A stretch of 64,000 nucleotides of DNA, from positions 183,113 through 247,112 of the IMG/VR virus record IMGVR_UViG_3300035703_000006. The stretch is one strand, 5' to 3'. The translations under genes and the position numbers were made by a program. How positions within the stretch are numbered: the first letter of the stretch is position 1; every line of letters starts with the position of its first letter. The notes beneath the pieces were generated by a model. It was not told the origin of the DNA, did no database searches, and saw only the letters and a list, made by a program, of their open reading frames with translations. Shown piece after piece: positions 33,221 through 61,900 of this stretch.

Positions 33221-33679
33221 ATGAAGACCTTCAAAGAGTTTTTAGAAGAAGCATATCTCGTTGAGATGCGTAAAGAAGATAAAGTTAAGGGTGAGAAGAA
33301 AACTCCACTTTATGTGACTAAAACTTCTGGTAGAGTTGTGAAGAATCCTGAGACTGGTCGTTCAGAAGTTAAAAAATCAACAAGAACTGCACTATCACCT
33401 AGAGCAGCAATCGGTAGGATTAAGCAGGGTATGAAAGACCCTCTCAACACCTATAGTCAACCAGAAACTTATGGTGCTACTAGACACGCACAAGGTGGTG
33501 GTGGAAGTGGAGCAGCAGCACCTGGAAGACTTAGAGGTGTTGGTAAGTTAGAAAAGCAGAAGATGGATAAGGAACAAAGAGAAAAAGGAGAAAGACCAGT
33601 TGGTTCAGGTCCATCTCCAGAATATAAAGTTGCATTGAGAAGAGCACAAAGAGCACGTTCATCTGGTGGTGGAAGATGA
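33221..33679 (+). CDS. Putative head internal protein
   Basis: N-terminus MKTFKEFLEEA resembles the T4 IP capsid-targeting sequence; very basic. Confidence 0.65.
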   Translation: MKTFKEFLEEAYLVEMRKEDKVKGEKKTPLYVTKTSGRVVKNPETGRSEVKKSTRTALSPRAAIGRIKQGMKDPLNTYSQPETYGATRHAQGGGGSGAAAPGRLRGVGKLEKQKMDKEQREKGERPVGSGPSPEYKVALRRAQRARSSGGGR

Positions 33680-34998
33680 AGACTTATCAAGAGTTTATTT
33701 CTGAAGCAAAGAAGTGTTGGCCTGGATATAAGAAGAAAGGCACTCAAAAACTCTTTGGGAAGACTTATAATCGTTGTGTGAAAGAAGGAAAAGTTCCCTG
33801 GGATGACCCAAAATATCCACTACAAAGTGGATGGACTCCAGCAGAAAAGAATAGAGCAAAAAGAGAAAGAACTGGTGTAGAAGACCCTAATAATCCACAA
33901 TATAAAATAAGTGATAAAGATATGGCTAGATATAGTGGAATGAAAGAAGTAGATGATACTGAAACTTCAAAATCACCTAAACAAAAGAAAACTTTATTAG
34001 GTAAAAAGAAACCACTAGAACATAAAACTCCTCCACACAAATTCAAAAAACAAAGACATGTAGACAACACATCTGATAATCCGTATTCTAAAAATTCAGC
34101 TTCTGGTTTATTAAAACCTGCAACTCATACAAAGGGGCAAGGAAGAAGAGCAGTAGGAGATAAATTTGATTCAACAATAGCACAAACTCCAATTCGTTCT
34201 GATGATACAAGAAGAAGAACCTCCAAAAAATGGGGAGGACCAAATCCAAAAAAAGAAGAATTTGAATATGAACTAGAAGAAAGTTCATCGGGTGAAAGAA
34301 GTGGAAGAAGAACCAGAGGCAAGGTAACTCTTGCCCGTGGTCGTGGTGCTGATATGGACCGTAAAGAGAGAACTACTGCTGCGATTGCAAAGAAAGCAGG
34401 TCTCAAGGGAACTGGTAAGTATTCCACTAAAGATTTGAGAACCAGAGCAGATGATTATACAACTTATGATAGTGATGATACTGATGATGATTATGGTAGC
34501 ACCGAGCAGGACCATTACATCCGCACTCACTCTTCTGCAAGAAAAGCAGCAAAGGGAGAGCATTTAGTTAAAAAATACAAGTTTAGAAGAAAAACACCCG
34601 AAGGACACACTAAAGTTAAAACTGCACCTTCAAGTGAAAGTGTAAGAAGAGTAAAGGATTTAAGAAAACAAATGACTAAAGCAGGTGCTAATAAGAGAGG
34701 TCCAGTTCATACTGTTGATATTATGCATCGTGATAGTGATGTTGGAAAAGGTGATAAGGACCAACAAATGGAAAGAGGTAGAAACTTTATCCAAGCACTG
34801 AAAGATACACCAAAGCATCTGAAGAGAGCAGGTGCAAAAAAAGGTGAAACTGTAGTCGGAAAACCAACAGCAGTGATGTCTGGTGAAGACCAGAAGACTG
34901 GAGTAGCAAAGAGAGCAAAACTTTATAAGAAAGTATTCGGCAAAAAGAGCACTGAAAAGTCCGCAAAAACAGGATTGATGACTGGAAAGGTCGATTGA
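33676..34998 (+). CDS. Putative head internal protein
   Basis: N-terminus MKTYQEFISEA; CWPGY...NRCVKE motif; Lys/Arg rich. Confidence 0.68.
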   Translation: MKTYQEFISEAKKCWPGYKKKGTQKLFGKTYNRCVKEGKVPWDDPKYPLQSGWTPAEKNRAKRERTGVEDPNNPQYKISDKDMARYSGMKEVDDTETSKSPKQKKTLLGKKKPLEHKTPPHKFKKQRHVDNTSDNPYSKNSASGLLKPATHTKGQGRRAVGDKFDSTIAQTPIRSDDTRRRTSKKWGGPNPKKEEFEYELEESSSGERSGRRTRGKVTLARGRGADMDRKERTTAAIAKKAGLKGTGKYSTKDLRTRADDYTTYDSDDTDDDYGSTEQDHYIRTHSSARKAAKGEHLVKKYKFRRKTPEGHTKVKTAPSSESVRRVKDLRKQMTKAGANKRGPVHTVDIMHRDSDVGKGDKDQQMERGRNFIQALKDTPKHLKRAGAKKGETVVGKPTAVMSGEDQKTGVAKRAKLYKKVFGKKSTEKSAKTGLMTGKVD

Positions 34999-35053
34999 AC
35001 CACTTTCCAAACTGTCCCCAGACCCCGCAAGGGGTCTTTTTTTGTGCTATAAT
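34998..35053 (+). promoter_or_regulatory. Palindrome + -10 early promoter overlapping a terminator
   Basis: AACCACTT-N4-AACTGTCC, TGCTATAAT; terminator AGACCCC-GCAA-GGGGTCT plus T-run at 35020-35043. Confidence 0.65.
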
Positions 35054-35073
35054 ACTTGAAACAAAGGACTCAA

Positions 35074-35481
35074 ATGGAACTTACAGTTGTAGCAATCAAA
35101 CGTGAAGATGGTCTGTATCACTTTGACCATCCTCATAATGATACAGTTGAAGAACTGCTGATGAATGGAACTGAAGAAGCAATTGATGAGCATTGCTACT
35201 TTAAGACTGGGAAGTATCCGATTGAAGGTGATGAAGTTGAGATTTCTCTCTTCCTTGAAGAACCTGCTGATTATGATACTCTTCTTGTGAAAGAAGTATC
35301 TGATGAAGAAGGAACAACTTATACTGATACTACAATGTGTCTTCCTGTATGGTTGTGCAACTGGAACCAAGGGTATTTTGGTTTTGTTCCAGAAAACCTT
35401 TATGTAAAAGTTCGTCCAATTAACAAAGGTCTTGAGAGTTTTGTGAAAACAACGGGAATGACTGGGTTTCTCAATAAATAA
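35074..35481 (+). CDS. Hypothetical protein (DUF6717-like)
   Basis: E.L..G.EE.ID..Y....WLC...YFG..PE.LYVK. Confidence 0.5.
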   Translation: MELTVVAIKREDGLYHFDHPHNDTVEELLMNGTEEAIDEHCYFKTGKYPIEGDEVEISLFLEEPADYDTLLVKEVSDEEGTTYTDTTMCLPVWLCNWNQGYFGFVPENLYVKVRPINKGLESFVKTTGMTGFLNK

Positions 35482-35501
35482 AGTTACTGAAAGAATTTAA
35501 G

Positions 35502-35828
35502 ATGCTCTCAACACAATACAGACTTAGGTTAGAAGCAATCTGCCATAAAATTTCCTTACACGAAGAAGTGTCTCTTGAAGATATGATTTGGGCAGAAAAA
35601 CTTGCAAAAGCAAATCGTTCTGCTGGGACAATGTTACGACAAGCACGTAGAAAGGCAGAAAATCCTGATATGCAAGAAGGTGATATGGATGATTTTTTAA
35701 ATCAACTTGATATTGGTGGTTTGGGAAATGAAAGATTTGGTGTTCGTAGATTTGAAAGTGTTGATGATATTGTAGATTTCTTTTCTGAAGATAGGGATAA
35801 ACCAGATGATTGGAGACAAAGAGATTGA
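35502..35828 (+). CDS. Conserved cyanophage hypothetical protein
   Basis: MLSTQYRLRLE.IC..WAEKL.KAN..LRQARR..DDW.QRD. Confidence 0.7.
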   Translation: MLSTQYRLRLEAICHKISLHEEVSLEDMIWAEKLAKANRSAGTMLRQARRKAENPDMQEGDMDDFLNQLDIGGLGNERFGVRRFESVDDIVDFFSEDRDKPDDWRQRD

Positions 35829-35851
35829 GGTAAAAATAAATAAAAATAAAA

Positions 35852-36220
35852 ATGAAAACCTTTAAAGAATTTATTGAAGAATCTTGGTCACAAAAATATA
35901 AAAAGTCCATTGATTGCAATAATCCAAAAGGATTTTCACAAAAAGCACATTGTGCTGGAAGAAAGAAAAGAGCAGCAGGTGGTGAAACTAAATCTAAACC
36001 AATCTCCGAACATTGTGGTTGCACAGATAACGCAGTAGGTGAACTTGAGGACGGACTCAAGAAATTGAATGATACTTCTTATGATTCAATTGATAAGTTA
36101 ATGCGTAAAATTATGAAAAAGCACAAGATGAGTGCAAAGGAACTACATAATGCTTTTGTTGACACTCACGGTAAAATACCTGATGAGTGGATAAAACAAA
36201 TAAATAAAAGAAAAAAGTAA
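35852..36220 (+). CDS. Putative head internal protein
   Basis: MKTFKEFIEES; WS.KYK.SIDC.NPKGFSQKAHC. Confidence 0.65.
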   Translation: MKTFKEFIEESWSQKYKKSIDCNNPKGFSQKAHCAGRKKRAAGGETKSKPISEHCGCTDNAVGELEDGLKKLNDTSYDSIDKLMRKIMKKHKMSAKELHNAFVDTHGKIPDEWIKQINKRKK

Positions 36221-36224
36221 TCAG

Positions 36225-36383
36225 ATGAAACCAACACCTAGAGAACTACAGGAAACTTATAAGACTTATTCAAAAGTTGTAGAGCATTTAGTTGCTGAAG
36301 GTTATGCAGATGATAATGAATCAGCAGATAAGATTATTGAGGGAATGAGTGAAACCTGGTATAATCTTATTATTGGATATTGA
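36225..36383 (+). CDS. 52-aa stand-alone HLxxEGYA module protein (absent from the ORF track)
   Basis: MKPTPRELQETYKTYSKVVEHLVAEGYADDNESADKIIEGMSETWYNLIIGY; ATAAATA upstream. Confidence 0.65.
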   Translation: MKPTPRELQETYKTYSKVVEHLVAEGYADDNESADKIIEGMSETWYNLIIGY

Positions 36384-36414
36384 TTTTATAAATACCTAAA
36401 AAGTATTTGTAAAA

Positions 36415-37245
36415 ATGGACGCACAAGACCTGCATAATCTTTCAGAAGCATATAGAGAAGTTTATGATAATATAATGGAAAGGGAAGATAGTCCTTATGA
36501 AAAAGCATCTGATGCAGCATTAGATGCAAGATATGGATATGGAAGAGCAACTGGGGATAAACGTTCTTTTGGAAGAGCAGCAAATCGTGCGTCTGCTGCT
36601 GCAATGTTGAAAAGATTGAGAAGAGATAGGGATGAAGGAAGATCAACTTCTAGAGAATCTGGAGCAGATGCAGTTCATCAAGGATGGGCACACACCGCAA
36701 GAACAAGTTCAGACCAAACACCAGAAAAGAAAGAAAGAAGAGCAAAACTTGCTGATACCTCATATTCAAATCTCCCTGATGATGAAAAGGAAAAAGATAG
36801 AGTTTCTGCTGACGCAGTAAGAGCAGTTTATAATAGAAATAAATCAACTAAAAAGGAAGAAGTGGATATTTACGACATTATCCTTTCGCACTTACTTGAT
36901 GAAGGATATGCCGAAACACCAGAAGCAGCAGAAGTCATTATGGTCAATATGAGTGAAGATTGGAGAGAAGATATTGTAGAAGCATACAAAGAACTTCCTG
37001 TTGGTAAAATGAGAAAACAGGTCATTAAACACGCTGCCTCTGGCACAAAGAGAGCATTTTTGTCAAAATTTAGAGGACAAAAAGGAACTACAGCAGGAAA
37101 TGTTGAAGATGCAAAAGCAATGAAATCTTTGAATAAGGCAAAAAAAATTCAAGCTGAAATTGAAAATAGAGAAAAAATGGGATCAGATTTTTATCAGGGT
37201 TCTAGAGAAGGACGTGCTCTTGTCAATAAAAGAAGAGGTCGTTGA
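36415..37245 (+). CDS. Late protein with RyR-like domain and HLxDEGYA module
   Basis: TATAAATA at 36387; AVHQGW..YSNLPDDEKEKDR; YDIILSHLLDEGYAET.EAA..IMVNMSE.W. Confidence 0.62.
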   Translation: MDAQDLHNLSEAYREVYDNIMEREDSPYEKASDAALDARYGYGRATGDKRSFGRAANRASAAAMLKRLRRDRDEGRSTSRESGADAVHQGWAHTARTSSDQTPEKKERRAKLADTSYSNLPDDEKEKDRVSADAVRAVYNRNKSTKKEEVDIYDIILSHLLDEGYAETPEAAEVIMVNMSEDWREDIVEAYKELPVGKMRKQVIKHAASGTKRAFLSKFRGQKGTTAGNVEDAKAMKSLNKAKKIQAEIENREKMGSDFYQGSREGRALVNKRRGR

Positions 37246-37301
37246 GGACACCTCAGCATCTGTCCACTAGTCTTGCCAAGCACCCCAAGAGGTGCTATGA
37301 T
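37246..37301 (+). promoter_or_regulatory. Palindrome + -10 early promoter
   Basis: GGACACCT-N4-ATCTGTCC, TGCTATGAT. Confidence 0.6.
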
Positions 37302-37326
37302 TACTAGGTAATCAAGAGAGGCACTG

Positions 37327-37545
37327 ATGGAAGTTCTTGAGTTCACTGATTCTTCTGCTATTGCAAAGATTCAGTTTGATAATGAACAAAATCAAGTAGG
37401 AATTGCTTATACCTACAAACCAGACAAAGTTTATGTCTTTAACTGCAACGATTTGACTCTTGTGAAAGAAAAAGTCAAAGGTGCAGAAAGTGTTGGAAAA
37501 CTTGTTTCTGAACTTCGTAAAGATGGGACTTTGATTGCTACTTGA
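37327..37545 (+). CDS. KTSC-like small protein
   Basis: SSAIAKIQFD....IAY....YVF....AESVGK. Confidence 0.6.
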   Translation: MEVLEFTDSSAIAKIQFDNEQNQVGIAYTYKPDKVYVFNCNDLTLVKEKVKGAESVGKLVSELRKDGTLIAT

Positions 37546-37586
37546 CAAAGAGTTCCAAGTCCTCTACAATTGACTTGGGTTTTTAT

Positions 37587-37674
37587 GGAAGTGAGACTTG
37601 GTAGTCAGAGTCGTCTTATAAACGATTTGCCCCAGATTAGGGCCTTTGAGATGGTTCGAATCCATCCACTTCTA
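37587..37674 (+). tRNA. Atypical tRNA with anticodon TAT (nominally Ile)
   Basis: GGAAGTG/CACTTCT acceptor, AGTCGT-CTTATAA-ACGATT, long variable arm, GATGG-TTCGAAT-CCATC; TTGACA-N17-TACAAT promoter upstream. Confidence 0.75.
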
Positions 37675-37678
37675 CCTT

Positions 37679-37752
37679 GCTCGTTTAGCAATCTGTCCGA
37701 ATGCAATCGTCTCATAAACGATCGAAGGTGGGTTAGATTCCCACAACGAGCA
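37679..37752 (+). tRNA. tRNA-CAT (Ile2 or Met)
   Basis: GCTCGTT/AACGAGC; ATCGT-CTCATAA-ACGAT; variant T-loop TTAGATT. Confidence 0.8.
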
Positions 37753-37795
37753 CTTGACAATCATAACTCTTTGTGGTATGATTGTCTCATCATCT

Positions 37796-37881
37796 GGGCG
37801 AGTGATGAAATTGGTTAGACATCTCAGACTTAAAATCTGACGGGCATAACGCCCATGCGGGTTCGAGTCCCGCCTCGCCTA
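37796..37881 (+). tRNA. tRNA-Leu(TAA)
   Basis: GGGCGAG/CTCGCCT; TCAGA-CTTAAAA-TCTGA; long variable arm. Confidence 0.93.
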
Positions 37882-37931
37882 TAAAATAACGGAAAAGGCA
37901 TATAAATAACTATACACTTGCCTATTTAAAT

Positions 37932-38396
37932 ATGCCGATGCCTAGAAATTACACTGATGAGCAATTTATAGAAGCAGTTGAAACTTCTACAAGTATTAGA
38001 CAGGTATTGTTTAAACTTGGGCTAAAAGAAGCAGGTGGAAATTATAAAGTTGCTCAAAATAGAATGAAGCAACTTGGTGTTAATTTACTCTCTGGACCTA
38101 ATGGACAAGGTTGGAGTAAAGGAAAAACTCTTGGACCTAAAAGGTCTATTGAAGAATATTTAAAAGAAGATATAGTAGTTCAATCATTTCGACTCAAAAA
38201 TCGCCTATTAGCAGAAGGTCTCAAAGAACACAAGTGCGAGTGCTGTGGTATAACTAAATGGAATGGGCAACCAGCACCAATTGAACTTGATCACATAAAC
38301 GGCAACCATCACGATAATAGATTAGAAAATCTTCGTATCTTATGTCCTAATTGTCACGCTCAAACTGAAACTTACCGAGGAAAAAACAAAAAATGA
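37932..38396 (+). CDS. HNH homing endonuclease
   Basis: CECCG...ELDHINGNHHDNRLENLRILCPNCHAQT; TATAAATA at 37901. Confidence 0.9.
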   Translation: MPMPRNYTDEQFIEAVETSTSIRQVLFKLGLKEAGGNYKVAQNRMKQLGVNLLSGPNGQGWSKGKTLGPKRSIEEYLKEDIVVQSFRLKNRLLAEGLKEHKCECCGITKWNGQPAPIELDHINGNHHDNRLENLRILCPNCHAQTETYRGKNKK

Positions 38397-38998
38397 TTAC
38401 TATTGATTACTTGAAAACCATCTGCGAAACCCAATGGGATTGGAATAGAATTTTTGGAGCAGTAGTTGATGTTTATTCTGATAAAGGATTTAAAAGTAAA
38501 GCAGACAATTTTATTCGATCTAGAATTCTTGAGCTATCTGTAGTTACTTTTTCAGAACTTATTCACATTGATGAAGATGGTGTGGATTTTATTCTGATGG
38601 TTGATGGTCAAGAAGTTTTAATTGAAGGAAAATTTCAAAAAGATTTCTTTAAACAAAGAAAAATTAAAGGAACTAATGAATTTCATACTTGCAATAAAGT
38701 CAAGATGAAAAATTACCGAGGTAAAATTGACGAGGATGCATTTAATAGATTTAAAGGAGAGAATAAATTTCATTATGTAATGATTATTGACCGAGAGTGC
38801 CTTAAAGTTGCGTTTGCATCCAAAGAAACAGCACAAAAATATTATGTTCACGAAGGTGATGGAGTTTTTTCATATCTCCCTTACAATGAATTGACTTATC
38901 TTGATTTGGATGTTGAAAACTTTACATTTCCTTCTTCTAATGTTAAACTTTCTGAGTTATTAGATGAAGTAATCATCAATTGGATTAAGAACCGATGA
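38393..38998 (+). CDS. Putative PD-(D/E)XK nuclease-fold protein
   Basis: E..DGVDF..(9)..IEGK motif; translationally coupled to the methylase. Confidence 0.5.
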   Translation: MITIDYLKTICETQWDWNRIFGAVVDVYSDKGFKSKADNFIRSRILELSVVTFSELIHIDEDGVDFILMVDGQEVLIEGKFQKDFFKQRKIKGTNEFHTCNKVKMKNYRGKIDEDAFNRFKGENKFHYVMIIDRECLKVAFASKETAQKYYVHEGDGVFSYLPYNELTYLDLDVENFTFPSSNVKLSELLDEVIINWIKNR

Positions 38999-39834
38999 AA
39001 CAATTTCCGCTTAAGACGGCATTGCGCTACCCAGGAGGCAAGAGTAAAGCACTAAAAACTCTTGCTCCTTGGTTTCCGAGTGACTTCAAAGAGTTCCGTG
39101 AACCATTCTTGGGTGGTGGAAGCATTTCTTTAATGATTTCCCAAAACTACCCAAAGGTTCCTATTTGGGTAAATGACAAATACTTTTATCTCTATAACTT
39201 CTGGATTCAACTTCGTGATAATGGTCAAACATTATCAGAAAAGTTGAGAGCAATCAAAGAAGAAGTAAATGGGGATGATGAAGCACATAAGGACTTGTTT
39301 AATCTGTATCAAAGTGACATTGAAACTCTTGAACCTTTTGAACAAGCAGTTGCTTTTTTCATTCTAAACAAGTGTTCCTATTCTGGTTTGACTGAAAATT
39401 CTACATTCTCAGTTCAAGCATCACGTTCTAATTTTTCTCTTGTTGGTATTGACAAACTTCCAAAGTATTCATACATTATCAAAGACTGGAAAATCACAAA
39501 CATTGATTATGAATCAGTAATGAATGATGCTGGTGATAACGTATTTGTCTTTCTTGACCCTCCTTACGACATTAAAGATTTTCTTTATGGAACGGGAAGG
39601 AAATTGCACTCCTCATTCTCACACGAAAGATTTGCGGATGATGTAGATAAATGTCCTCATCGTTTTATGATTACTTATAATCTTAATGATTGGTTGTTAA
39701 ATCGTTATAAAGAGTACAATCTTAATGAGTGGAAACTTCGTTATTCAATGGTTCATCGTGGTGAAAAGGGTACTCAGGACAATGTAAAAACAGAATTATT
39801 AATTACAAACTATGTTCTAGATTCAGTTTTATAA
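38995..39834 (+). CDS. dam: DNA adenine methyltransferase (D12/Dam class)
   Basis: RYPGGKS, FREPFLGGGS, WVND, FLDPPY. Confidence 0.9.
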   Translation: MKQFPLKTALRYPGGKSKALKTLAPWFPSDFKEFREPFLGGGSISLMISQNYPKVPIWVNDKYFYLYNFWIQLRDNGQTLSEKLRAIKEEVNGDDEAHKDLFNLYQSDIETLEPFEQAVAFFILNKCSYSGLTENSTFSVQASRSNFSLVGIDKLPKYSYIIKDWKITNIDYESVMNDAGDNVFVFLDPPYDIKDFLYGTGRKLHSSFSHERFADDVDKCPHRFMITYNLNDWLLNRYKEYNLNEWKLRYSMVHRGEKGTQDNVKTELLITNYVLDSVL

Positions 39835-39863
39835 ATAAAGTATATAAAACACATTCTGGACCA

Positions 39864-40829
39864 ATGAATTATAAGGACCTTCAAAACATTTCCGATCTTT
39901 CCCAACAAATTCTTACAGAAGCTGCTTCTGAAGAGTACGATGTAATGAATCGTTGGCCTTATGCCTCACCTTATCTTCAAGAAGAAAGAGCACCTGGTGT
40001 AAAACCATATAAAGCAGGACCAACTCAAGCAGAAGTCAGAGCAGATGCAAGAGCAGCTCGTAAGAAGCACGTAGGAAAAGCAGAAGGTCAGTATGGTTAC
40101 GGTCCTGAAGAAAAGTTCAAAGACTGGAAAGATAGAGCAACACCCGCTTCAATACTTAGAAGAAGAAGTCCAGAAGGAGGAACAGAAGAGGAAACTGTTT
40201 CACAAAGAATGAATCGTGAAAAGCCCTATGTCAAGAGAATGACTGGTCCTCTTGCTAGAGCACAAGGAAGTCGTACTGCTTCTGCTGTTACTAGAACAAT
40301 TGAAGGTCCAGGAGAACCTCAAGCAGTTACAATGCCTAGAAAAGGTAGAGATGAAAAGAAAAAGCCTTCTAGAGAAATTGTTCGTAAGGGAAAGCAAGAA
40401 GAAAGTTTTGACCTTTGGGTAAATTCTCTTCTTGATGAAGGTTACGACCTAAGTGATTATAGTTGGGATGAGATGTATGAGATTTATATGAGTGAAGAGA
40501 GAATTGATCTTTATGATGTAATCCTTTCGCATCTTATTGACGAGGGTTATGCAGAAACTCAAGAATCAGCAGAAGCAATTATGGTGAATATGAGTGAAGA
40601 GTGGAAGCAGAGTATTGTTGAAGACATTAGAGGTGCCATTACTTATAATCCAAACACTCCTATTGGCAAATTGAAAAGAAGAATAAAGGGTTCTACTCCA
40701 GAAAAGAGAGAAGCAAGAACAAGAGCATATCAGGGAAATAGATCCGATGCTGCTGAGAGATATGGTGCATCTCAACGTAATCCATATGATGACAACAGGG
40801 GAGATATACCTTCTTTGAGGGGAAAATAA
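39864..40829 (+). CDS. Late protein with HLxDEGYA module(s)
   Basis: TATAAATA at 39830; LLDEGYDLS..; YDVILSHLIDEGYAETQESAEAIMVNMSEEW. Confidence 0.65.
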   Translation: MNYKDLQNISDLSQQILTEAASEEYDVMNRWPYASPYLQEERAPGVKPYKAGPTQAEVRADARAARKKHVGKAEGQYGYGPEEKFKDWKDRATPASILRRRSPEGGTEEETVSQRMNREKPYVKRMTGPLARAQGSRTASAVTRTIEGPGEPQAVTMPRKGRDEKKKPSREIVRKGKQEESFDLWVNSLLDEGYDLSDYSWDEMYEIYMSEERIDLYDVILSHLIDEGYAETQESAEAIMVNMSEEWKQSIVEDIRGAITYNPNTPIGKLKRRIKGSTPEKREARTRAYQGNRSDAAERYGASQRNPYDDNRGDIPSLRGK

Positions 40830-40975: not shown

Positions 40976-41173
40976 ATGTCTGACACTGTAACCCAAATTG
41001 CTTCTGTTTTTGAAACTTGGAAACAAGAAGACGAAAAATTTGAAAATGGCAATGCTTCTGCTGGAACTAGAGCAAGAAAAGCACTTCAAGAAATTGCAAA
41101 ACTTGCAAAGGCTCGTAGAGCAGAAATCTCTGAAGCAAAGAATGCTAGAAAAGAAGCAAAAGTTGCATCTTGA
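40976..41173 (+). CDS. Histone H1-like (Hc1-family) protein
   Basis: KFENGNASAGTRARKALQEIAKLAKARRAEI; TTGACA-N17-TAAAAT and TATAAATA upstream. Confidence 0.72.
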   Translation: MSDTVTQIASVFETWKQEDEKFENGNASAGTRARKALQEIAKLAKARRAEISEAKNARKEAKVAS

Positions 41174-41523: not shown

Positions 41524-41573
41524 TAAGGGGTGGTTGAGAGACCACCAGCACCTAGACAACTTAAACCTTTAAT

Positions 41574-41653
41574 GGGGTGGTTCCCGTAGTGGCGAACGGA
41601 CCTGGCTTTTAACCAGAGATTATACACCGTGGGTTCGAGTCCCACCCACCCCA
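41574..41653 (+). tRNA. tRNA-Lys(TTT)
   Basis: GGGGTGG/CCACCCC; CTGG-CTTTTAA-CCAG. Confidence 0.88.
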
Positions 41654-41656
41654 TAT

Positions 41657-41747
41657 GAGAGAGTGTCTACTGTCGGCAATATGTGTAGTCCGTGTCTGTA
41701 AAACACGTACATAAGAACCATCGGGGGTTCGATTCCCTCCTCTCTCA
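41657..41747 (+). tRNA. tRNA-Tyr(GTA), enlarged D-arm
   Basis: GAGAGAG/CTCTCTC; CGTGT-CTGTAAA-ACACG. Confidence 0.85.
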
Positions 41748-41751
41748 CCTT

Positions 41752-41826
41752 GCGGACTTAGTTCAGTGGTAGAACGCAACCTTGCCAAGGTTGATGTCAC
41801 GAGTTCGAATCTCGTAGTCCGCTCCA
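41752..41826 (+). tRNA. tRNA-Gly(GCC)
   Basis: Canonical cloverleaf, CCA encoded. Confidence 0.95.
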
Positions 41827-41829
41827 TTT

Positions 41830-41903
41830 GACGATGTAACTCAGCGGTCTAGAGTGCTTCCCTGTCACGGAAGAAGTCGGGGGTTCAAATCCCCTCATCG
41901 TCG
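41830..41903 (+). tRNA. tRNA-Asp(GTC)
   Basis: GACGATG/CATCGTC; CTTCC-CTGTCAC-GGAAG. Confidence 0.93.
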
Positions 41904-41951
41904 TTGCTATGCTGCCGATGGAGTGTCCCTCCTTGGTGGTTGTAGAATTAA

Positions 41952-42023
41952 GTTCCTATCGACTAGCGGTTAGGTCACCACCCTTTCAAGGTGGTAGCAC
42001 GGGTTCGAATCCCGTTAGGAATA
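41952..42023 (+). tRNA. tRNA-Glu(TTC)
   Basis: GTTCCTA/TAGGAAT; CCACC-CTTTCAA-GGTGG. Confidence 0.93.
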
Positions 42024-42026
42024 CTT

Positions 42027-42100
42027 GGGAACATAGCTCCAATTGGTAGAGCACAGGATTGAAGATCTTGGTGTTGTCGGTTCAAGTCCGACTGTTCCCC
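42027..42100 (+). tRNA. tRNA-Phe(GAA)
   Basis: GGGAACA/TGTTCCC; CAGGA-TTGAAGA-TCTTG. Confidence 0.92.
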
Positions 42101-42104
42101 CCTT

Positions 42105-42176
42105 GGAACCGTAGCTCAGTGGTAGAGCACTCGGCTGATAACCGAGCGGTCACAAGTTCAAATCTTGTCGGTTCCA
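42105..42176 (+). tRNA. tRNA-Ile(GAT)
   Basis: GGAACCG/CGGTTCC; CTCGG-CTGATAA-CCGAG. Confidence 0.95.
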
Positions 42177-42230
42177 TTGTTGCCTTGATGCAACCTAAAT
42201 CGCACTTAGGTTAATTCAAGGCAACATTAA

Positions 42231-42320
42231 GGAAGTGTGGCAGAGAGGTCTAATGCAGTGGATTGCTAATCCGCCGATGTTCTTTAAGAGCATCCGTTGG
42301 TTCGAATCCAACCACTTCCG
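42231..42320 (+). tRNA. tRNA-Ser(GCT)
   Basis: GGAAGTG/CACTTCC, G73, long variable arm. Confidence 0.93.
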
Positions 42321-42324
42321 CCTT

Positions 42325-42396
42325 GGCAATGTAGTTCAGTGGTAGAACAAGAGATTCATACCCTCTATGTCGGTAGTTCAATTCTACCCATTGTCA
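42325..42396 (+). tRNA. tRNA-Met(CAT)
   Basis: GGCAATG/CATTGTC; anticodon loop TTCATAC. Confidence 0.88.
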
Positions 42397-42397
42397 T

Positions 42398-42469
42398 GTG
42401 TCGTTATCCTAGTGGTCAAGGAACCTGTTTGTGAAACAGGGTAGATGAGTTCAATTCTCATACGGCACC
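42398..42469 (+). tRNA. tRNA-His(GTG)
   Basis: GTGTCGT/ACGGCAC, C73; CCTGT-TTGTGAA-ACAGG; position -1 is T. Confidence 0.88.
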
Positions 42470-42471
42470 CC

Positions 42472-42544
42472 GCCCGATTAGCTCAGTGGTAGTAGCATCT
42501 GTCTAGTAAACAGAAGGTCGTCAGTTCGAATCTGACATTGGGCT
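42472..42544 (+). tRNA. tRNA-Thr(AGT)
   Basis: GCCCGAT/ATTGGGC; TCTGT-CTAGTAA-ACAGA. Confidence 0.9.
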
Positions 42545-42577
42545 CTCAACTATCCAGTAATCCTTGATAGTTCAAAT

Positions 42578-42653
42578 GTTCAGGTGGCAGAGTGGTCGAA
42601 TGCGAGAGTCTGCAAAACTCTTATCATCGTGGGTTCGAATCCCACCCTGAACT
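42578..42653 (+). tRNA. tRNA-Cys(GCA)
   Basis: GTTCAGG/CCTGAAC, U73; AGAGT-CTGCAAA-ACTCT. Confidence 0.93.
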
Positions 42654-42682
42654 CTTATCCCATCGAATTCGATGGGATTTAA

Positions 42683-42754
42683 TCCAGAATCGACTAATTG
42701 GCAGGTCAGCACCCTTTGAAGGTGTACGTCTAGGTTCGAATCCTAGTTCTGGAA
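42683..42754 (+). tRNA. tRNA-Gln(TTG)
   Basis: TCCAGAA/TTCTGGA; GCACC-CTTTGAA-GGTGT. Confidence 0.92.
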
Positions 42755-42756
42755 TT

Positions 42757-42829
42757 GTCCATGTAGCCCAATGGAAGAGGCAATAGACTAAGGATCTATT
42801 TGTTGGAGGTTCGAATCCTCTCATGGACA
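42757..42829 (+). tRNA. tRNA-Leu(AAG) lacking the long variable arm
   Basis: GTCCATG/CATGGAC, A73; ATAGA-CTAAGGA-TCTAT; 5-nt variable loop. Confidence 0.82.
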
Positions 42830-42833
42830 CCTT

Positions 42834-42905
42834 GTTGGGTTGGTGCAATTGGTAGCATCTTGGTCTCCAAAACCAAAGATCAGAGTTCAAGTCTCTGACC
42901 CTTCG
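42834..42905 (+). tRNA. tRNA-Trp(CCA)
   Basis: TTGGT-CTCCAAA-ACCAA; acceptor GTTGGGT/ACCCTTC with two U-U mismatches. Confidence 0.82.
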
Positions 42906-42908
42906 CCT

Positions 42909-42982
42909 ATCCTCTTAACTCAGTGGACTAGAGTGCTTGGCTACGAACCAAGAAGTCGCAGGTTCAAATCCTGCAGAGGATG
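42909..42982 (+). tRNA. tRNA-Arg(ACG)
   Basis: ATCCTCT/AGAGGAT; CTTGG-CTACGAA-CCAAG. Confidence 0.92.
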
Positions 42983-43011
42983 TTGACAATTTATACTACA
43001 TATAGTATGAT
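42983..43011 (+). promoter_or_regulatory. Internal sigma70 promoter
   Basis: TTGACA-N17-TATGAT. Confidence 0.75.
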
Positions 43012-43020
43012 TGTCATATT

Positions 43021-43103
43021 GGAGAGAGTCCGGTTGGTCGAGGACACCGCCTTGAAAGCGGCTGGGTGTAAAAGCTTCGCAGGTTCGATTCCTGTTCTCT
43101 CCG
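43021..43103 (+). tRNA. tRNA-Ser(TGA)
   Basis: GGAGAGA/TCTCTCC, G73, long variable arm. Confidence 0.92.
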
Positions 43104-43124
43104 TTGCTCCTTGTGAGCAACAAT

Positions 43125-43196
43125 GCCCTTGTAGCTCAGTGGTAGAGCAATGGTTTTGTAAACCATTGGTCGTCCGTTCAAATCGGATCGGGGGCT
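43125..43196 (+). tRNA. tRNA-Thr(TGT)
   Basis: GCCCTTG/CGGGGGC; ATGGT-TTTGTAA-ACCAT. Confidence 0.94.
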
Positions 43197-43234
43197 CTTG
43201 ACAAATCCGAAAGGGTATGTCATAATAAACAAAT

Positions 43235-43309
43235 GCGAAATTAATTCAGCGGTAGAATGTCTGCCTTCCAAGCAGAACGTCAGGAGTTCGAATCTCCTAT
43301 TTCGCTCCA
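43235..43309 (+). tRNA. tRNA-Gly(TCC)
   Basis: GCGAAAT/ATTTCGC, CCA encoded; TTGACA-N17-CATAAT upstream. Confidence 0.94.
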
Positions 43310-43384
43310 GGGTGATTAACTCAGTGGTAGAGTAATTCCCTTACAAGGAATGAGTCACTGGTTCGAATCCAGTATTACCCACCA
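43310..43384 (+). tRNA. tRNA-Val(TAC)
   Basis: GGGTGAT/ATTACCC, CCA encoded; abuts both neighbours with no spacer. Confidence 0.94.
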
Positions 43385-43458
43385 CGGAATGTAGCTCAGT
43401 TTGGTAGAGCACTCGCTTTGGGAGCGAGATGTCGCAGGTTCGAATCCTGTCATTCCGA
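43385..43458 (+). tRNA. tRNA-Pro(TGG)
   Basis: CGGAATG/CATTCCG; CTCGC-TTTGGGA-GCGAG. Confidence 0.95.
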
Positions 43459-43499
43459 CTTGGAGGTAATAAATATCTCCATTAATTGCAAAATACATT

Positions 43500-43655
43500 A
43501 TGTCTCTTATTTCACAAAAAGACCGAGAAAATGTTATTGAGTCTCTTGACTTCTACCTTTTTAGTAAAGGACAAGATTTCACAGAGGAAAAAAGAGCAGA
43601 ATTCAATGCTCTTCTCAATTGGATTAAACTTGAGTATTCAAAGAATGAAAATTAA
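43500..43655 (+). CDS. 51-aa hypothetical protein within the tRNA array
   Basis: MSLISQKDRENVIESLDFY..FNALLNWIKLE; overlaps the next start. Confidence 0.6.
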   Translation: MSLISQKDRENVIESLDFYLFSKGQDFTEEKRAEFNALLNWIKLEYSKNEN

Positions 43656-43818
43656 TCTTTGGCATTGTAAAGATATGGGTCAATGGAGATGGTCATTAAC
43701 TGACGACTCTAGACCAATTATTAAACAAGAAACTGGTCAAAGACCTAATTTACGTGATGCGATGAATGATATCGCAAATAATGTTGAACATATGATGGGT
43801 TATAGTGGGGAAGTGTAA
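43645..43818 (+). CDS. Hypothetical protein; 3' end overlaps the initiator-type tRNA
   Basis: MKINLWHCKDMGQWRWSLTD..LRDAMNDIAN. Confidence 0.65.
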   Translation: MKINLWHCKDMGQWRWSLTDDSRPIIKQETGQRPNLRDAMNDIANNVEHMMGYSGEV

Positions 43819-43878
43819 CGGTTGCACAGAAGTCTCATAAGCTTCAGGTAGGAGGTTCAATTCCTCCCCCCGCCACCA
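43804..43878 (+). tRNA. tRNA-Met(CAT), initiator-like
   Basis: A1-C72 mismatch, CCA encoded; lacks the three consecutive G-C anticodon-stem pairs. Confidence 0.82.
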
Positions 43879-43881
43879 AAT

Positions 43882-43955
43882 GCCGTGGGTAGTCTAGTGG
43901 TCAGGACAGGCAGACAATGCACTTGGAGTTTGGGTTCGATTCCCAATCTGCGGCA
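43882..43955 (+). ncRNA. tRNA-like RNA or pseudo-tRNA with aberrant anticodon arm
   Basis: GCCGTGGG/TCTGCGGC stem, normal D-arm, TTGGG-TTCGATT-CCCAA T-arm; no 7-nt anticodon loop. Confidence 0.7.
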
Positions 43956-43984
43956 CACACAACATACACACAAGGAGTAAACAA

Positions 43985-44188
43985 ATGACACCTTACGAAC
44001 TACGATTTGAAATTTTTAAGCAAGCATATAATTTTGCTAATGATAAGTTCAGTATCGAATATGATACTGCCCGTTGCTGGAATGAAAATTCTAGAAATAC
44101 GGTGAAAATAGATTACCCAGATTTTCCGACTTATGAGCAGGTAGAGTACCTTGCAGAAAAGATTAATACTTTTGTAAGTTCTAAGTAA
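43985..44188 (+). CDS. Conserved phage hypothetical protein
   Basis: MTPYELRFEIFKQA..YP.FPT...V..LA..IN.FVS; AAGGAG RBS. Confidence 0.75.
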   Translation: MTPYELRFEIFKQAYNFANDKFSIEYDTARCWNENSRNTVKIDYPDFPTYEQVEYLAEKINTFVSSK

Positions 44189-44219
44189 AATAGTGGGGTG
44201 GCAACACCCCCGTTAGTAT

Positions 44220-44292
44220 TCCCATCGACCGAGCAAGCGAACGGGCCCGACTGTTAATCGGAGATTGGTAGGGGCAGTACCTACGATGGGAG
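44220..44292 (+). tRNA. tRNA-Asn(GTT) with GGCAGTA T-loop
   Basis: TCCCATC/GATGGGA, G73; CCGA-CTGTTAA-TCGG; GTAGG-GGCAGTA-CCTAC. Confidence 0.82.
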
Positions 44293-44465
44293 TTAGAAGG
44301 GTTGGAAATGTCCGATTCTTCTAAATTTAATAAGGTCTGGAAAGTAAAAGGAGAATGGGAACCGAAAGGAGATACCTCACCTGCCTTATTATCTTATTCA
44401 CTGCCCTCTAATGCAGTGAAAATTGCAGAAAGTGTCTTCTGCGGGTGACGGGCACTCGTTACCCA
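44293..44465 (+). ncRNA. Multi-hairpin pseudoknotted RNA (manA-motif-like candidate)
   Basis: Five stems; loops AGTGTC and GGCACT are complementary. Confidence 0.65.
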
Positions 44466-44468
44466 TTT

Positions 44469-44549
44469 GCTCAAGTGGCGGAATGGTATACGCAGCAGAC
44501 TTAGAATCTGCCGTCGCAAGACTTGGAGGTTCAAGTCCTCTCTTGAGCA
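44469..44549 (+). tRNA. tRNA-Leu(TAG)
   Basis: GCTCAAG/CTTGAGC; GCAGA-CTTAGAA-TCTGC. Confidence 0.94.
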
Positions 44550-44575
44550 TTGAAAACTAAATAGTTTTCTTATAA

Positions 44576-44648
44576 GGGGGCATAGCTCAATTGGTAGAGC
44601 ACTTGATTTGCATTCAAGAGGTTTCGAGTTCGAGACTCGATGCTTCCA
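44576..44648 (+). tRNA. tRNA-Ala(TGC)
   Basis: GGGGGCA/TGCTTCC with G3-U70. Confidence 0.94.
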
Positions 44649-60951: not shown

Positions 60952-61780
60952 GTATTCATCAAGTCAAGGGAGGTTTCAAGATGATTGACACTTGTGTTCT
61001 TCACGATGATTACGAGGACTTTGCTGAAAAGTATCTCGGTATTGATTATGATGACTATGTGACTTTTGAACTTGGTCTTCCTGATGAAGATGAACTTGAA
61101 ATTGAATATCCTGTAGGTATTTGATTTCAAAAGGAATGGGTTTGCCTCAAAGTTACCCACTTTTACTCACTTGACTTTTTATTAAATGTCTGCTAAACTG
61201 ATTGCTCTTGCTGCTGAAATTGTTGATATCAACCCTGCTGGTGCTCAACTGATTGTCAATCTGACTAAGGCAGAAACTGGTGCTGAGATTGTAGAAGCAC
61301 TGGATAATTATGATTCTGTAGTTCTTGAGTATCATACTGAATCTGTTGAAACTGAGGGTGAAGTAACTCTCACCGATGCAGATGGTGTTGTAACTTCTGT
61401 TTGATTTTTACTCTTTAATTTCATAACCAACTAATTTTATTATGGCACGTCGTTCTAAATCTGCATCTCGTCAAATGGTTGAATCTCTCAAAGACCAACT
61501 CACAGAGTATTTCCGTGAAAATGTTTTTGATGATTATGACTATGAAGATTTGACGGGTTCCGAACTCTTTGAAGCACTTATTGAAACATTCAAAGAACTT
61601 GAGAATGAACTCAAAGAAGAACTGAAACCAATTCAGTATGTGCTAAATAAACTTGACCCAGAGGATACTGAACCTCAAGTTCTCAACGGGTGATTCTTAT
61701 GGGCATCAAAGGTCCAAACTTTGAGTAAGTCCCACCCCCTCCATGCCTCTTTACAATGCACAAACAGGAGGGTCTCTTAT

Positions 61781-61853
61781 GGGGCAGCAGCATGACGGAT
61801 CATGCACCATCCTTCTAAGATGTAAGATGGGGGTTCAAATCCCTCCTGCCCTG
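61781..61853 (+). tRNA. tRNA-Arg(TCT)
   Basis: GGGGCAG/CTGCCCT; CATC-CTTCTAA-GATG. Confidence 0.88.
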
Positions 61854-61900
61854 TTTAATAGTCTATTTATATAAATAATAATAAATATCCATTGAACTAT

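What the first reader, a model, noticed from the sequence alone, without database searches (positions are those of the whole stretch)
36225..40829. A portable ~45-aa HLxxEGYA...MSExW module occurring alone and fused to different cargos
Seen: it forms an entire 52-aa ORF (36225-36383, missed by the track). It sits internally in 36415 after a RyR-like segment (AVHQGW...YSNLPDDEKEKDR), and in 39864 with a second related LLDEGY motif. All three follow late boxes and flank the capsid-signal genes. Inference: a second head-packaging or scaffold-docking tag allowing modular loading of cargo domains.
Basis: partly seen in the sequence, partly recalled or inferred. Interest (0 to 1): 0.6.

Follow-up and report, generated by a model that had tools for sequence, protein, structure and literature searches.

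The report
Leader-plus-module late protein family in cyanomyoviruses
The repeated 45-residue motif is real and marks a very large, undescribed family of late-promoter proteins in T4-like cyanophages. It almost always comes with a conserved N-terminal leader resembling phage T4's capsid-targeting signal, so these are probably proteins packed into the phage head, though no virion data exist.

Summary
A ~45-aa acidic three-helix module occurs alone (52-aa ORF 36225), once in 36415 and twice in tandem in 39864. Three more copies lie elsewhere in this 247-kb T4-like cyanomyovirus genome.

The 52-aa ORF is a real gene: 76 homologue clusters, nearly all exactly 52 aa, under purifying selection.

A profile of the module finds 3,799 representative proteins in public data. 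None belongs to a Pfam or NCBIfam family; the PHROG hits have no known function.

The module is not a free tag on arbitrary cargo:
- About 84% of complete members start with a conserved leader, M-x-x-Q-D/E-L-R-N-L-Q-E-A-Y-x-x-V-Y.
- A search with the leader alone returned 83 of 85 proteins that carry the module.
- Between leader and module lie hypervariable, mostly basic, disordered cassettes. In 36415 one cassette is RyR-like.

The leader resembles the T4 capsid-targeting sequence (MKTYQEFIAE), which three neighbouring ORFs carry almost verbatim. The body of one such neighbour recurs, 62-64% identical, behind the new leader in module proteins.

72% of family genes sit behind TATAAATA at -27/-28.

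Best reading (about 0.42): late, prohead-targeted internal proteins. The leader acts as a CTS-like propeptide and the module as a protein-protein docking or oligomerisation domain. Virion association is untested.

The parts
36225..36383 (+). 52-aa ORF consisting of the module alone: a short N-terminal extension (MKPTPRELQETY) followed by the three-helix module.
   Evidence: HMM E 3e-26. 76 homologue clusters, mostly exactly 52 aa. pN about 0.2 against saturated pS. AlphaFold pLDDT 91.2 with helices 5-25, 31-40 and 43-51.
36199..36206 (+). AATAAATA, a variant late-promoter-like box 26 nt upstream of ORF 36225.
   Evidence: It is not the canonical TATAAATA.
36387..36394 (+). TATAAATA late-promoter box. 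With the conserved 5'UTR CCTAAAAAGTATTTGTAAAA it forms the family's shared 5' cassette.
36415..36465 (+). N-terminal leader of ORF 36415 (MDAQDLHNLSEAYREVY), CTS-like, with L-S-E|A at residues 9-12.
   Evidence: In the 123-sequence alignment M1, E11, A12 and Y13 are invariant, and Q4, L9 and V16 are at least 90% conserved. Compared with the T4 CTS MKTYQEFIAE.
36562..36855 (+). RyR-like helical cassette of ORF 36415 (residues about 50-147), an optional body cassette.
   Evidence: pLDDT 81-94. Pfam RyR below threshold. BFVD phage RyR-domain models with probability up to 1.0. The same cassette occurs in about 10 of 333 family members, at differing positions.
36850..36993 (+). Module copy in ORF 36415 (residues 146-193).
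   Evidence: HMM E 1.7e-25. phrog_3708 E 2.9e-8.
36415..37245 (+). Whole 276-aa family member: leader, RyR-like cassette, module and a basic tail.
39830..39837 (+). TATAAATA late-promoter box 34 nt upstream of ORF 39864.
39864..39923 (+). Variant leader of ORF 39864 (MNYKDLQNISDLSQQILTEA), shared by a conserved subfamily.
   Evidence: The same leader type occurs in P0098, P0146, P0163, P0312, P0313 and P0317.
40380..40499 (+). First module copy of ORF 39864, the variant form (WVNSLLDEGYDLSDYSWDEMYEIYMSEE).
   Evidence: HMM E 5.6e-18. phrog_27516 E 6.5e-5.
40494..40634 (+). Second, canonical module copy of ORF 39864. It abuts the first, so the last helix of copy 1 runs into the first helix of copy 2.
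   Evidence: HMM E 5.3e-24. phrog_3708 E 1.5e-10.
39864..40829 (+). Whole 321-aa family member with tandem modules.
33221..33679 (+). 152-aa basic ORF with a T4-type capsid-targeting leader (MKTFKEFLEEAYLVEM). Its leader looks intermediate between the T4 CTS and the family leader.
   Evidence: pI 10.4. Residues 13-71 are 48% identical to module protein P0216.
33676..34998 (+). 440-aa basic ORF whose first 10 residues match the T4 CTS at 9 of 10 positions (MKTYQEFISE). Its body cassette recurs in module-family proteins.
   Evidence: Residues 27-192 are 62% identical to P0186 (E 1e-66) and 64% identical to P0120. pI 10.0.
35852..36220 (+). 122-aa basic ORF with a T4-type leader (MKTFKEFIEESW), directly upstream of the 52-aa ORF.

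Best explanation
The three ORFs belong to one large, undescribed, hypervariable protein family found in a subset of T4-like cyanomyoviruses.

Architecture of a typical member:
- a conserved late promoter and 5'UTR cassette;
- a conserved 17-residue N-terminal leader (M-x-x-Q-D/E-L/F-R-N-L-Q-E-A-Y-x-x-V-Y);
- one or more variable, mostly basic and disordered body cassettes (RyR-like in 36415);
- one to three copies of the acidic ~45-residue three-helix module.
The 52-aa ORF is the module on its own.

Proposed mechanism. The proteins are made late and recruited into the assembling prohead core. The leader would act like a T4 capsid-targeting propeptide and be removed by the gp21-type prohead protease after the invariant L-x-E before Ala. 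The module would be a protein-protein interaction domain that docks the protein to a conserved head or core partner, or oligomerises family members. The variable basic body would stay with the packaged DNA and be ejected into the next host.

Shown: the family, its architecture, leader-module coupling, cassette sharing with T4-CTS proteins, enrichment of the late-promoter box, the fold prediction, and the presence of a gp21-type protease.

Inferred: cleavage, packaging, docking and ejection.
For: Family size and lack of annotation. Profile A2 finds 3,799 representative proteins at E<=1e-3. There are 2,923 90%-identity clusters of 152-483 aa. No Pfam, NCBIfam or PADLOC family matches, and the PHROG hits have unknown function.

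Leader-module coupling. Of 326 complete module proteins, 245 carry the strict leader and 28 a loose one; 17 have the module itself at the N-terminus. A search with the leader region only gave 83 of 85 new proteins carrying the module.

Leader resembles the T4 CTS. In 123 aligned members M1, E11, A12 and Y13 are invariant and L9 is at least 90% conserved, giving L-x-E|A. The T4 CTS is MKTYQEFIAE. It is cleaved once, and residues 8 and 10 govern processing. T4 gp21 cleaves after Glu in a short motif, and N- and C-terminal propeptides are known.

The genome has the T4 machinery and T4-type signals. Peptidase_S77 is present at E 1.4e-36, with Gp23 and a gp22 homologue that begins MSRGKNLQE. Three neighbouring basic ORFs begin with near-exact T4 CTS sequences.

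The same cargo sits behind either leader. Residues 27-192 of ORF 33676 are 62% identical to module protein P0186 (E 1e-66) and 64% identical to P0120. None of 333 module proteins carries the T4-type leader.

Late promoter. TATAAATA lies within 60 nt upstream of 64 of 89 family ORFs, against 43 of 442 other same-strand ORFs (p 3e-33). It sits mostly at -27/-28 and is followed by a conserved UTR.

Protein properties. Bodies are basic (pI 9.1-9.8 in four of six own-genome members), as T4 internal proteins are; the module is acidic. The 52-aa module protein folds confidently as a three-helix bundle (pLDDT 91).

Selection. Module copies within the genome have pS 0.75 against pN 0.18, which indicates selection on the protein rather than recent gene conversion.

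Synteny of the 52-aa gene. It lies in the gp23-to-uvsW stretch in other cyanomyoviruses: just downstream of gp23 in ~210-kb metagenome contigs and in S-SCSM2R, and between uvsY and uvsW in P-SSM2.
Against: - There are no virion proteome data for any family member. Syn9, S-PM2, S-SM1 and S-CREM2 lack the module. The S-SCSM2R proteome lists 23 proteins with only one of unknown function, and its identity is not available.
- Cleavage at L-x-E|A is inferred from a short motif only.
- The 52-aa subfamily does not keep an L-x-E site at its N-terminus in S-SCSM2R or P-SSM2. ORF 39864 is not basic (pI 6.3).
- The module is acidic, as is the gp22 core, so simple charge attraction to the scaffold is unlikely.
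- In this genome the 52-aa gene is not near the head genes.
- A self-association prediction gave no verdict.
- Fold searches gave no specific relative.
Confidence: 0.42

Rival explanations
1. Late non-virion proteins. The module is a LisH-like self-association motif, and the multi-module basic disordered proteins cross-link into a scaffold or condensate in the infected cell (for DNA compaction, assembly sites or host takeover) without being packaged.
For: - Some divergent members exceed Pfam's LisH cut-off of 21.6 bits on the helix-1/Gly-Tyr turn of the module: P0207 27.2, P0203 27.1, P0247 25.4 and P0236 24.3 bits. In all, 9 of 150 scanned members hit at E<=1e-3.
- Members commonly carry one to three modules; 16 of 80 loci hold two family genes, and genomes hold up to six paralogues.
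- Linkers are basic and disordered.
- A histone-H1-like Hc1 gene with a late box lies next door at 40976.
Against: - The window's own modules do not hit LisH at all.
- The homodimer prediction gave no verdict.
- This reading does not explain the invariant leader with L-x-E|A, its likeness to the T4 CTS, or the sharing of body cassettes with genuine T4-CTS ORFs.
- Extreme sequence diversification is unusual for assembly or compaction factors.
Confidence: 0.22
2. The module, not the leader, is the capsid or scaffold docking tag. It is a second, independent head-packaging signal that can load any fused cargo.
For: - The module is the most conserved element and recurs in many contexts, including alone.
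- It is often C-terminal: 63 of 248 proteins end within 8 residues of it.
- T4 Alt has C-terminal as well as N-terminal propeptides.
- The module contains a conserved L-D-E|G that also fits the T4 protease motif.
Against: - The module is almost never found without the leader or an N-terminal module, so it does not behave as an independent tag.
- The T4-CTS proteins that share its cargo cassettes carry no module, and 0 of 333 module proteins carry the T4-type leader.
- A 52-aa protein consisting only of a tag has no cargo to load.
- No interaction test with scaffold, portal or capsid protein was run.
Confidence: 0.15
3. The module is a nucleic-acid-binding three-helix domain (ANTAR-, RecX- or HTH-like), and the proteins are late regulators of RNA or DNA.
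For: - The four best structural matches in the wide PDB search are all ANTAR domains (NasR, EutV, AmiR, Rv1626): Z 5.0-5.2, rmsd 2.6-3.1 over 49-51 residues.
- One source names a 52-aa homologue 'OraA/RecX'.
Against: - Z of about 5 is inside the noise range the tool states for small helical models.
- No ANTAR or RecX Pfam hit was seen in any of the scans.
- The module is strongly acidic: the 52-aa protein has pI 4.5 and net charge -5. That is unfavourable for binding nucleic acid.
Confidence: 0.06

Closest known systems
Phage T4 internal proteins (IPI, IPII, IPIII) and Alt, which carry capsid-targeting sequences and are processed by the gp21 prohead protease
   Same: - A short N-terminal leader ending in hydrophobic-x-Glu followed by Ala.
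- Basic, poorly conserved bodies.
- Late-type promoter.
- A gp21-type protease, a gp22 scaffold and a gp23 capsid protein in the same genome.
- Genes clustered with ORFs that carry near-exact T4 CTS sequences and share body cassettes with them.
   Different: - The leader sequence differs (MxxQDLRNLQEAY against MKTYQEFIAE) and is one residue longer before the putative cut.
- Members additionally carry one to three copies of a conserved acidic three-helix module that T4 internal proteins lack.
- Packaging and cleavage are unproven.
LisH motif (Pfam PF08513), a eukaryotic two-helix dimerisation motif
   Same: The pattern hydrophobic-x-x-[HY]-L-x-x-E-G-[YF], then a turn, then a helix. Several divergent family members score above Pfam's LisH threshold on this stretch.
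   Different: - The window's copies do not hit LisH.
- The module has a third helix with an invariant M-S-E-x-W.
- Dimerisation is not shown.
- The context is phage, not eukaryotic.
PHROG families 3708, 22522 and 27516 (unknown function)
   Same: The window's module segments match these profiles at E 1.5e-10 to 6.5e-5. They are the existing automatic clusters for parts of this family.
   Different: The PHROGs are unannotated, and each covers only some architectures. None defines the leader-plus-module organisation.
RyR domain proteins of phages (Pfam PF02026)
   Same: Residues about 50-147 of ORF 36415 carry the HxxW ... Y-x-x-L-P-x-x-E-K-x-K-D-R signature. They resemble phage RyR-domain models.
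   Different: The match is below Pfam's threshold (14.5 against 27.4 bits). It applies to one optional cassette found in about 3% of family members, not to the module.

Membership tests
T4-type capsid-targeted internal proteins | N-terminal propeptide of 10-19 residues ending in a hydrophobic-x-Glu cleavage motif. | tested here: met
   L9-x-E11|A12 is invariant or nearly so in 123 aligned members. ORF 36415 has L-S-E|A. This is a sequence pattern only.
T4-type capsid-targeted internal proteins | Sequence identity of the leader to the T4 CTS MKTYQEFIAE. | tested here: not met
   The family leader is MxxQ[DE][LF]RNLQEAY. Only neighbouring ORFs 33221, 33676 and 35852 carry the T4-type sequence, and 0 of 333 module proteins do.
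T4-type capsid-targeted internal proteins | A gp21-type prohead protease and a scaffold core are encoded by the same phage. | tested here: met
   Peptidase_S77 at E 1.4e-36 and Gp23 at E 6.9e-152 in the own genome. A gp22 homologue is present.
T4-type capsid-targeted internal proteins | The protein is present in proheads and virions, and the leader is cleaved. | not testable with these tools
   The four other cyanophages with published virion proteomes that were checked (Syn9, S-PM2, S-SM1, S-CREM2) lack the family. The S-SCSM2R proteome table is not available.
T4-type capsid-targeted internal proteins | A basic, poorly conserved body. | tested here: inconclusive
   pI is 9.1-9.8 for four of six own-genome members, but 6.3 for 39864 and 4.5 for the 52-aa protein. 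Bodies are hypervariable: 3,799 clusters at 50% identity.
LisH motif (PF08513) | Score above Pfam's gathering threshold of 21.6 bits. | tested here: not met
   The window's and genome's modules give no LisH hit even at E<=10. Some relatives do reach it: 24.3-27.2 bits.
LisH motif (PF08513) | Homodimerisation through the motif. | tested here: inconclusive
   The two-copy complex prediction of the 52-aa protein scored 0.21 against a mark of 0.42. The tool's verdict was 'no answer'.
ANTAR RNA-binding domain | Sequence-family match and a basic RNA-binding surface. | tested here: not met
   There is only a structural resemblance at Z 5.0-5.2. No Pfam ANTAR hit was seen. The module is acidic.
RyR domain (PF02026), for the body cassette of ORF 36415 only | Score above Pfam's gathering threshold of 27.4 bits. 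| tested here: not met
   14.5 bits, E 0.042. The structural likeness to phage RyR-domain models is suggestive: probability up to 1.0, E 0.04-0.65. The best PDB hit is 6uhi at E 0.6.

The most novel reading that the evidence does not exclude
A subset of cyanomyoviruses has a second, bipartite capsid-loading system. A conserved late-promoter/UTR/leader cassette and an acidic three-helix docking module bracket a freely exchangeable cargo slot. This system packages and injects a hypervariable arsenal of thousands of basic effector variants. It draws on the same cargo pool as the classical T4 capsid-targeting sequence and may be evolving in an arms race with host defences.
Probability: 0.3. Interest if true: 0.75.

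Novelty: new variant of a known kind. Interest (0 to 1): 0.58.

Why it matters
T4-like cyanophages kill a large share of marine Synechococcus and Prochlorococcus, yet what they carry in their heads besides DNA is almost unknown. If this family is capsid-targeted, three things follow.
- It would be the first defined set of internal, ejected proteins for cyanomyoviruses.
- It would be a natural example of interchangeable targeting leaders on a shared pool of cargo cassettes.
- It would be a likely reservoir of anti-defence or host-takeover functions, given its extreme diversification.

It would also offer a second packaging tag for engineering T4-type capsids. Even if the proteins are not packaged, the work defines a large domain family of unknown function (3,799 clusters at 50% identity) with a clear signature, a conserved late regulatory cassette and a confident fold model. 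That makes it directly testable.

Tried and rejected
Searches that found no specific relative:
- Foldseek of the 52-aa model against PDB: no match below E 2.
- The wide VIA-align search: only Z of about 5, to ANTAR domains, within the noise the tool states for small helical models.
- ESM Atlas shape search and feature search: only unnamed clusters or irrelevant rows.
- Profile against PDB sequences: nothing below E 0.1.
- NCBIfam and PADLOC: no hits.
- Literature search for the leader string: no paper.

Complex prediction. Two copies of the 52-aa protein gave 'no answer' (0.21 against a mark of 0.42). This is not evidence either way.

Virion proteomes:
- Syn9, S-PM2, S-SM1 and S-CREM2 lack the module.
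- The S-SCSM2R paper reports 23 virion proteins but its table is not held.

Other steps:
- A megablast of the region against phage records found nothing.

Ideas considered and dropped:
- Recent gene conversion as the reason the modules look alike. Synonymous sites between copies are saturated.
- RecX identity, named by one source. No Pfam support.
- A PARP-like hit in one of 150 members (E 5e-4). I could not locate the protein and did not follow it up.

Full report
CONTEXT

The window is the last 64 kb of a single 247,112-bp virus contig. The contig encodes a T4-type major capsid protein (PF07068, E 6.9e-152) and a prohead protease (PF03420, E 1.4e-36). It also has a gp22-type scaffold protein. 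The window alone holds 27 tRNA genes. By tblastn the nearest isolates are Synechococcus and Prochlorococcus myoviruses such as S-SRM01 and P-SSM2. It is a large T4-like cyanomyovirus.

THE OBSERVATION

I built an HMM from the four window copies of the motif and ran it against every six-frame ORF of the genome.
- It recovers the 52-aa ORF 36225-36383 (E 3e-26).
- It recovers ORF 36415-37245 (E 1.7e-25, residues 146-193).
- It recovers two abutting copies in ORF 39864-40829 (5.6e-18 and 5.3e-24).
- It also finds three ORFs outside the window. The one at genome 126113 (235 aa) has a truncated copy plus a C-terminal copy. The one at 95207 (551 aa) has a C-terminal copy. The one at 93956 (405 aa) has a weak copy next to a segment like a HAD or polynucleotide-kinase phosphatase (phrog_415, E 2.4e-4).

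The consensus is (V/Y)DxYDxILSHLxxEGYA(D/E)TxExAxxIMxNMSExWxxxI.

The 52-aa ORF is a genuine gene. It has 76 homologue clusters at 66-96% identity, nearly all exactly 52 residues, one of them seen on 648 contigs. Between the window and other cyanophages synonymous sites are saturated while pN is about 0.2. Module copies inside this genome likewise differ mostly at synonymous sites (pS 0.75, pN 0.18). Their likeness therefore reflects selection on the protein, not recent gene conversion.

Canonical TATAAATA boxes lie 28 and 34 nt upstream of 36415 and 39864. ORF 36225 has only AATAAATA.

SIZE AND ANNOTATION OF THE FAMILY

A profile of the module finds 3,799 representative proteins (clusters at 50% identity) at E<=1e-3 in 1.84 billion, and 2,658 at E<=1e-10. 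The word search alone lists 2,923 clusters of 152-483 aa.

No Pfam, NCBIfam or PADLOC family covers them. The matching PHROGs (3708, 22522, 27516) have no known function. I found no paper containing the leader string.

Copy numbers among isolates:
- Carriers: S-CRM01 (4 copies), S-SRM01 (4), S-SCSM2R (3), P-SSM2 (2), plus tblastn hits in P-SSM5, S-CAM7, B3, B23, DSL-LC02 and DSL-LC03.
- Non-carriers: Syn9, S-PM2, S-SM1 and S-CREM2.

THE KEY CORRECTION: THE MODULE IS NOT A FREE TAG

Nearly every module protein begins with a conserved leader, M-[DN]-[AS]-Q-[DE]-[LF]-R-N-L-Q-E-A-Y-[LM]-[ED]-V-Y. The 326 complete module proteins break down as follows:
- 245 have the strict leader.
- 28 have a loose form.
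- 17 have a module at the very N-terminus.
- Most of the rest carry recognisable variants, including the MNY[KR]DLQNIS..SQQIL type of ORF 39864.

In the reverse direction, a search with only residues 1-40 of a typical member returned 85 new proteins. 83 of them contain the module.

In a 123-sequence alignment M1, E11, A12 and Y13 are invariant. Q4, L9 and V16 are at least 90% conserved.

Between leader and module lie hypervariable, highly charged, mostly basic segments. A Pfam scan of 150 diverse members found no recurrent globular domain apart from LisH-type hits on the module itself. So 'different cargos' is true in the sense of different body cassettes, but they are mainly low-complexity linkers.

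ORF 36415 is an exception. Residues about 50-147 fold confidently (pLDDT 81-94) and carry a sub-threshold RyR signature (Pfam 14.5 bits). Several phage RyR-domain models are among their best BFVD matches, and the best PDB row is a Bacteroides RyR domain. This cassette recurs in about 10 of 333 family members, at different positions.

THE LINK TO THE T4 CAPSID-TARGETING SEQUENCE

The T4 capsid-targeting sequence is MKTYQEFIAE. It is cut once by the prohead protease, and proteins fused to it are packaged. Residues 4 and 7 matter for targeting and residues 8 and 10 for processing. T4-related phages are thought to use such leaders to load varied proteins. T4 gp21 cleaves after Glu in a short motif, and both N- and C-terminal propeptides occur.

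Three basic ORFs just upstream of the module genes begin with near-exact T4 sequences:
- 33676: MKTYQEFISEA
- 35852: MKTFKEFIEES
- 33221: MKTFKEFLEEAYLVEM. The tail of this leader resembles the family leader (LQEAYLEV).

The family leader has the same logic: a Met-initiated amphipathic stretch ending in L-x-E before Ala, at residues 9-12.

Most tellingly, the same body cassette occurs behind either leader.
- Residues 27-192 of ORF 33676 are 62% identical (E 1e-66) to residues 9-179 of P0186. That protein has the family leader and a module.
- The same residues are 64% identical to an internal stretch of P0120, between two modules.
- Residues 13-71 of ORF 33221 are 48% identical to module protein P0216.
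- None of 333 module proteins has the T4-type leader.

The two leader types are thus alternative front ends on a shared cargo pool. The module travels only with the new leader.

LATE EXPRESSION SIGNAL

In 80 independent IMG/VR loci, TATAAATA lies within 60 nt upstream of 64 of 89 family ORFs of at least 100 aa. The figure for other same-strand ORFs is 43 of 442 (odds ratio 24, p 3e-33). The box sits at -27 or -28 in 46 cases. It is followed by a conserved UTR, (A/C)CTAAAAAGTATTTGTAAAA. ORF 36415 has exactly this cassette.

THE MODULE ITSELF

With a 55-row alignment the 52-aa protein is predicted at pLDDT 91.2 as three helices: 5-25, 31-40 and 43-51. It is acidic (pI 4.5).

Fold searches gave nothing specific. 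Foldseek against PDB had no match below E 2. The wide search ranked four ANTAR domains first at Z 5.0-5.2, within the tool's stated noise for small helical models.

A few divergent relatives exceed Pfam's LisH threshold on the helix-1/Gly-Tyr turn, at 24.3-27.2 bits against 21.6. The window's copies do not. LisH-like self-association is therefore a lead only. A two-copy complex prediction gave no verdict.

SYNTENY OF THE 52-AA GENE

In ~210-kb metagenomic cyanomyovirus contigs and in S-SCSM2R the homologue lies in the short stretch between gp23 and gp3. In the contigs it is two genes after the major capsid gene; in S-SCSM2R it directly follows it. In P-SSM2 it lies between uvsY and uvsW. In this genome gp23 is followed directly by gp3, uvsY and uvsW, and the 52-aa gene sits with the leader-bearing genes instead.

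INTERPRETATION

The best-supported reading is a family of late, prohead-targeted internal proteins. The leader acts as a CTS-like propeptide. The module acts as a conserved protein-protein interaction domain, for docking or oligomerisation. The variable basic body is the payload.

I put this at about 0.42, because packaging, cleavage and binding are all inferred.

The main rival (about 0.22) is a late, non-packaged role based on LisH-like self-association of multi-module basic proteins. A nucleic-acid-binding role (about 0.06) is disfavoured by the acidity of the module.

The family is not described in the libraries and papers I could search. I rate it a new variant of a known kind: T4-type leader-directed head proteins.

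Noticed in passing
window 40976-41173 (+): A 65-aa ORF matches the chlamydial histone-H1-like protein Hc1 (PF07432, E 1.5e-15, above threshold). It has a TATAAATA box 36 nt upstream. This may be a late DNA-condensing protein in a cyanophage.
   Followed up: partly
window 37587-39834 (+): Three tRNA genes (Ile-TAT, Met, Leu-TAA) are followed by an HNH endonuclease (37932-38396), an unassigned 201-aa ORF (38393-38998) and a D12-class N6-adenine DNA methyltransferase (38995-39834). Together they sit between module genes 36415 and 39864. This looks like an inserted mobile or restriction-modification-like cassette.
   Followed up: partly
window 33221-36220 (+): Three basic ORFs (152, 440 and 122 aa; pI 9.6-10.4) begin with near-exact copies of the T4 capsid-targeting sequence MKTYQEFIAE. 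The same DNA pattern is absent from Syn9, S-PM2, S-SM1, S-CREM2 and S-SCSM2R. It is present four times in S-SRM01 and once in P-SSM2 when one mismatch is allowed.
   Followed up: partly
window 36387-36414, and upstream of most family genes in loci L020-L099: There is a conserved 5' cassette: T-run, TATAAATA, (A/C)CTAAAAAGTATTTGTAAAA, ATG. The UTR beyond the promoter box is conserved across metagenomes. That suggests a shared translational or regulatory element.
   Followed up: partly
genome C1:93956-95173 (locus L007:957-2174): A 405-aa ORF with a late box at -28 combines a weak module copy (17 bits) with a part like a HAD or polynucleotide-kinase phosphatase (DVDETLF ... ITAR ... YDD; phrog_415 E 2.4e-4). 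This is the only enzyme-like cargo seen among the genome's six family members.
   Followed up: partly
window 41573-44648 and 61780-61854: A large tRNA array: 27 tRNA genes in the window in all, covering most amino acids.
   Followed up: no
genome C1:126113-126820 (locus L008:1114-1821): This paralogue contains a truncated first module (KKEQVDIYDIILSHFLDE, then unrelated sequence). Its DNA is nearly identical to the start of the same protein's C-terminal module, which suggests a recent internal duplication or recombination scar.
   Followed up: partly
window 6878-10357 (+): A 1,159-aa ORF is related to RCC1 and BNR-repeat proteins of S-SRM01 and of Clostridioides and other phages (tblastn up to 56% identity).
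   Followed up: no
window 54735-54947 (+): A 70-aa ORF begins MTNEELLKLAETY and contains ALYDEGY. It loosely echoes both the leader and the module turn, but the module HMM does not detect it.
   Followed up: no
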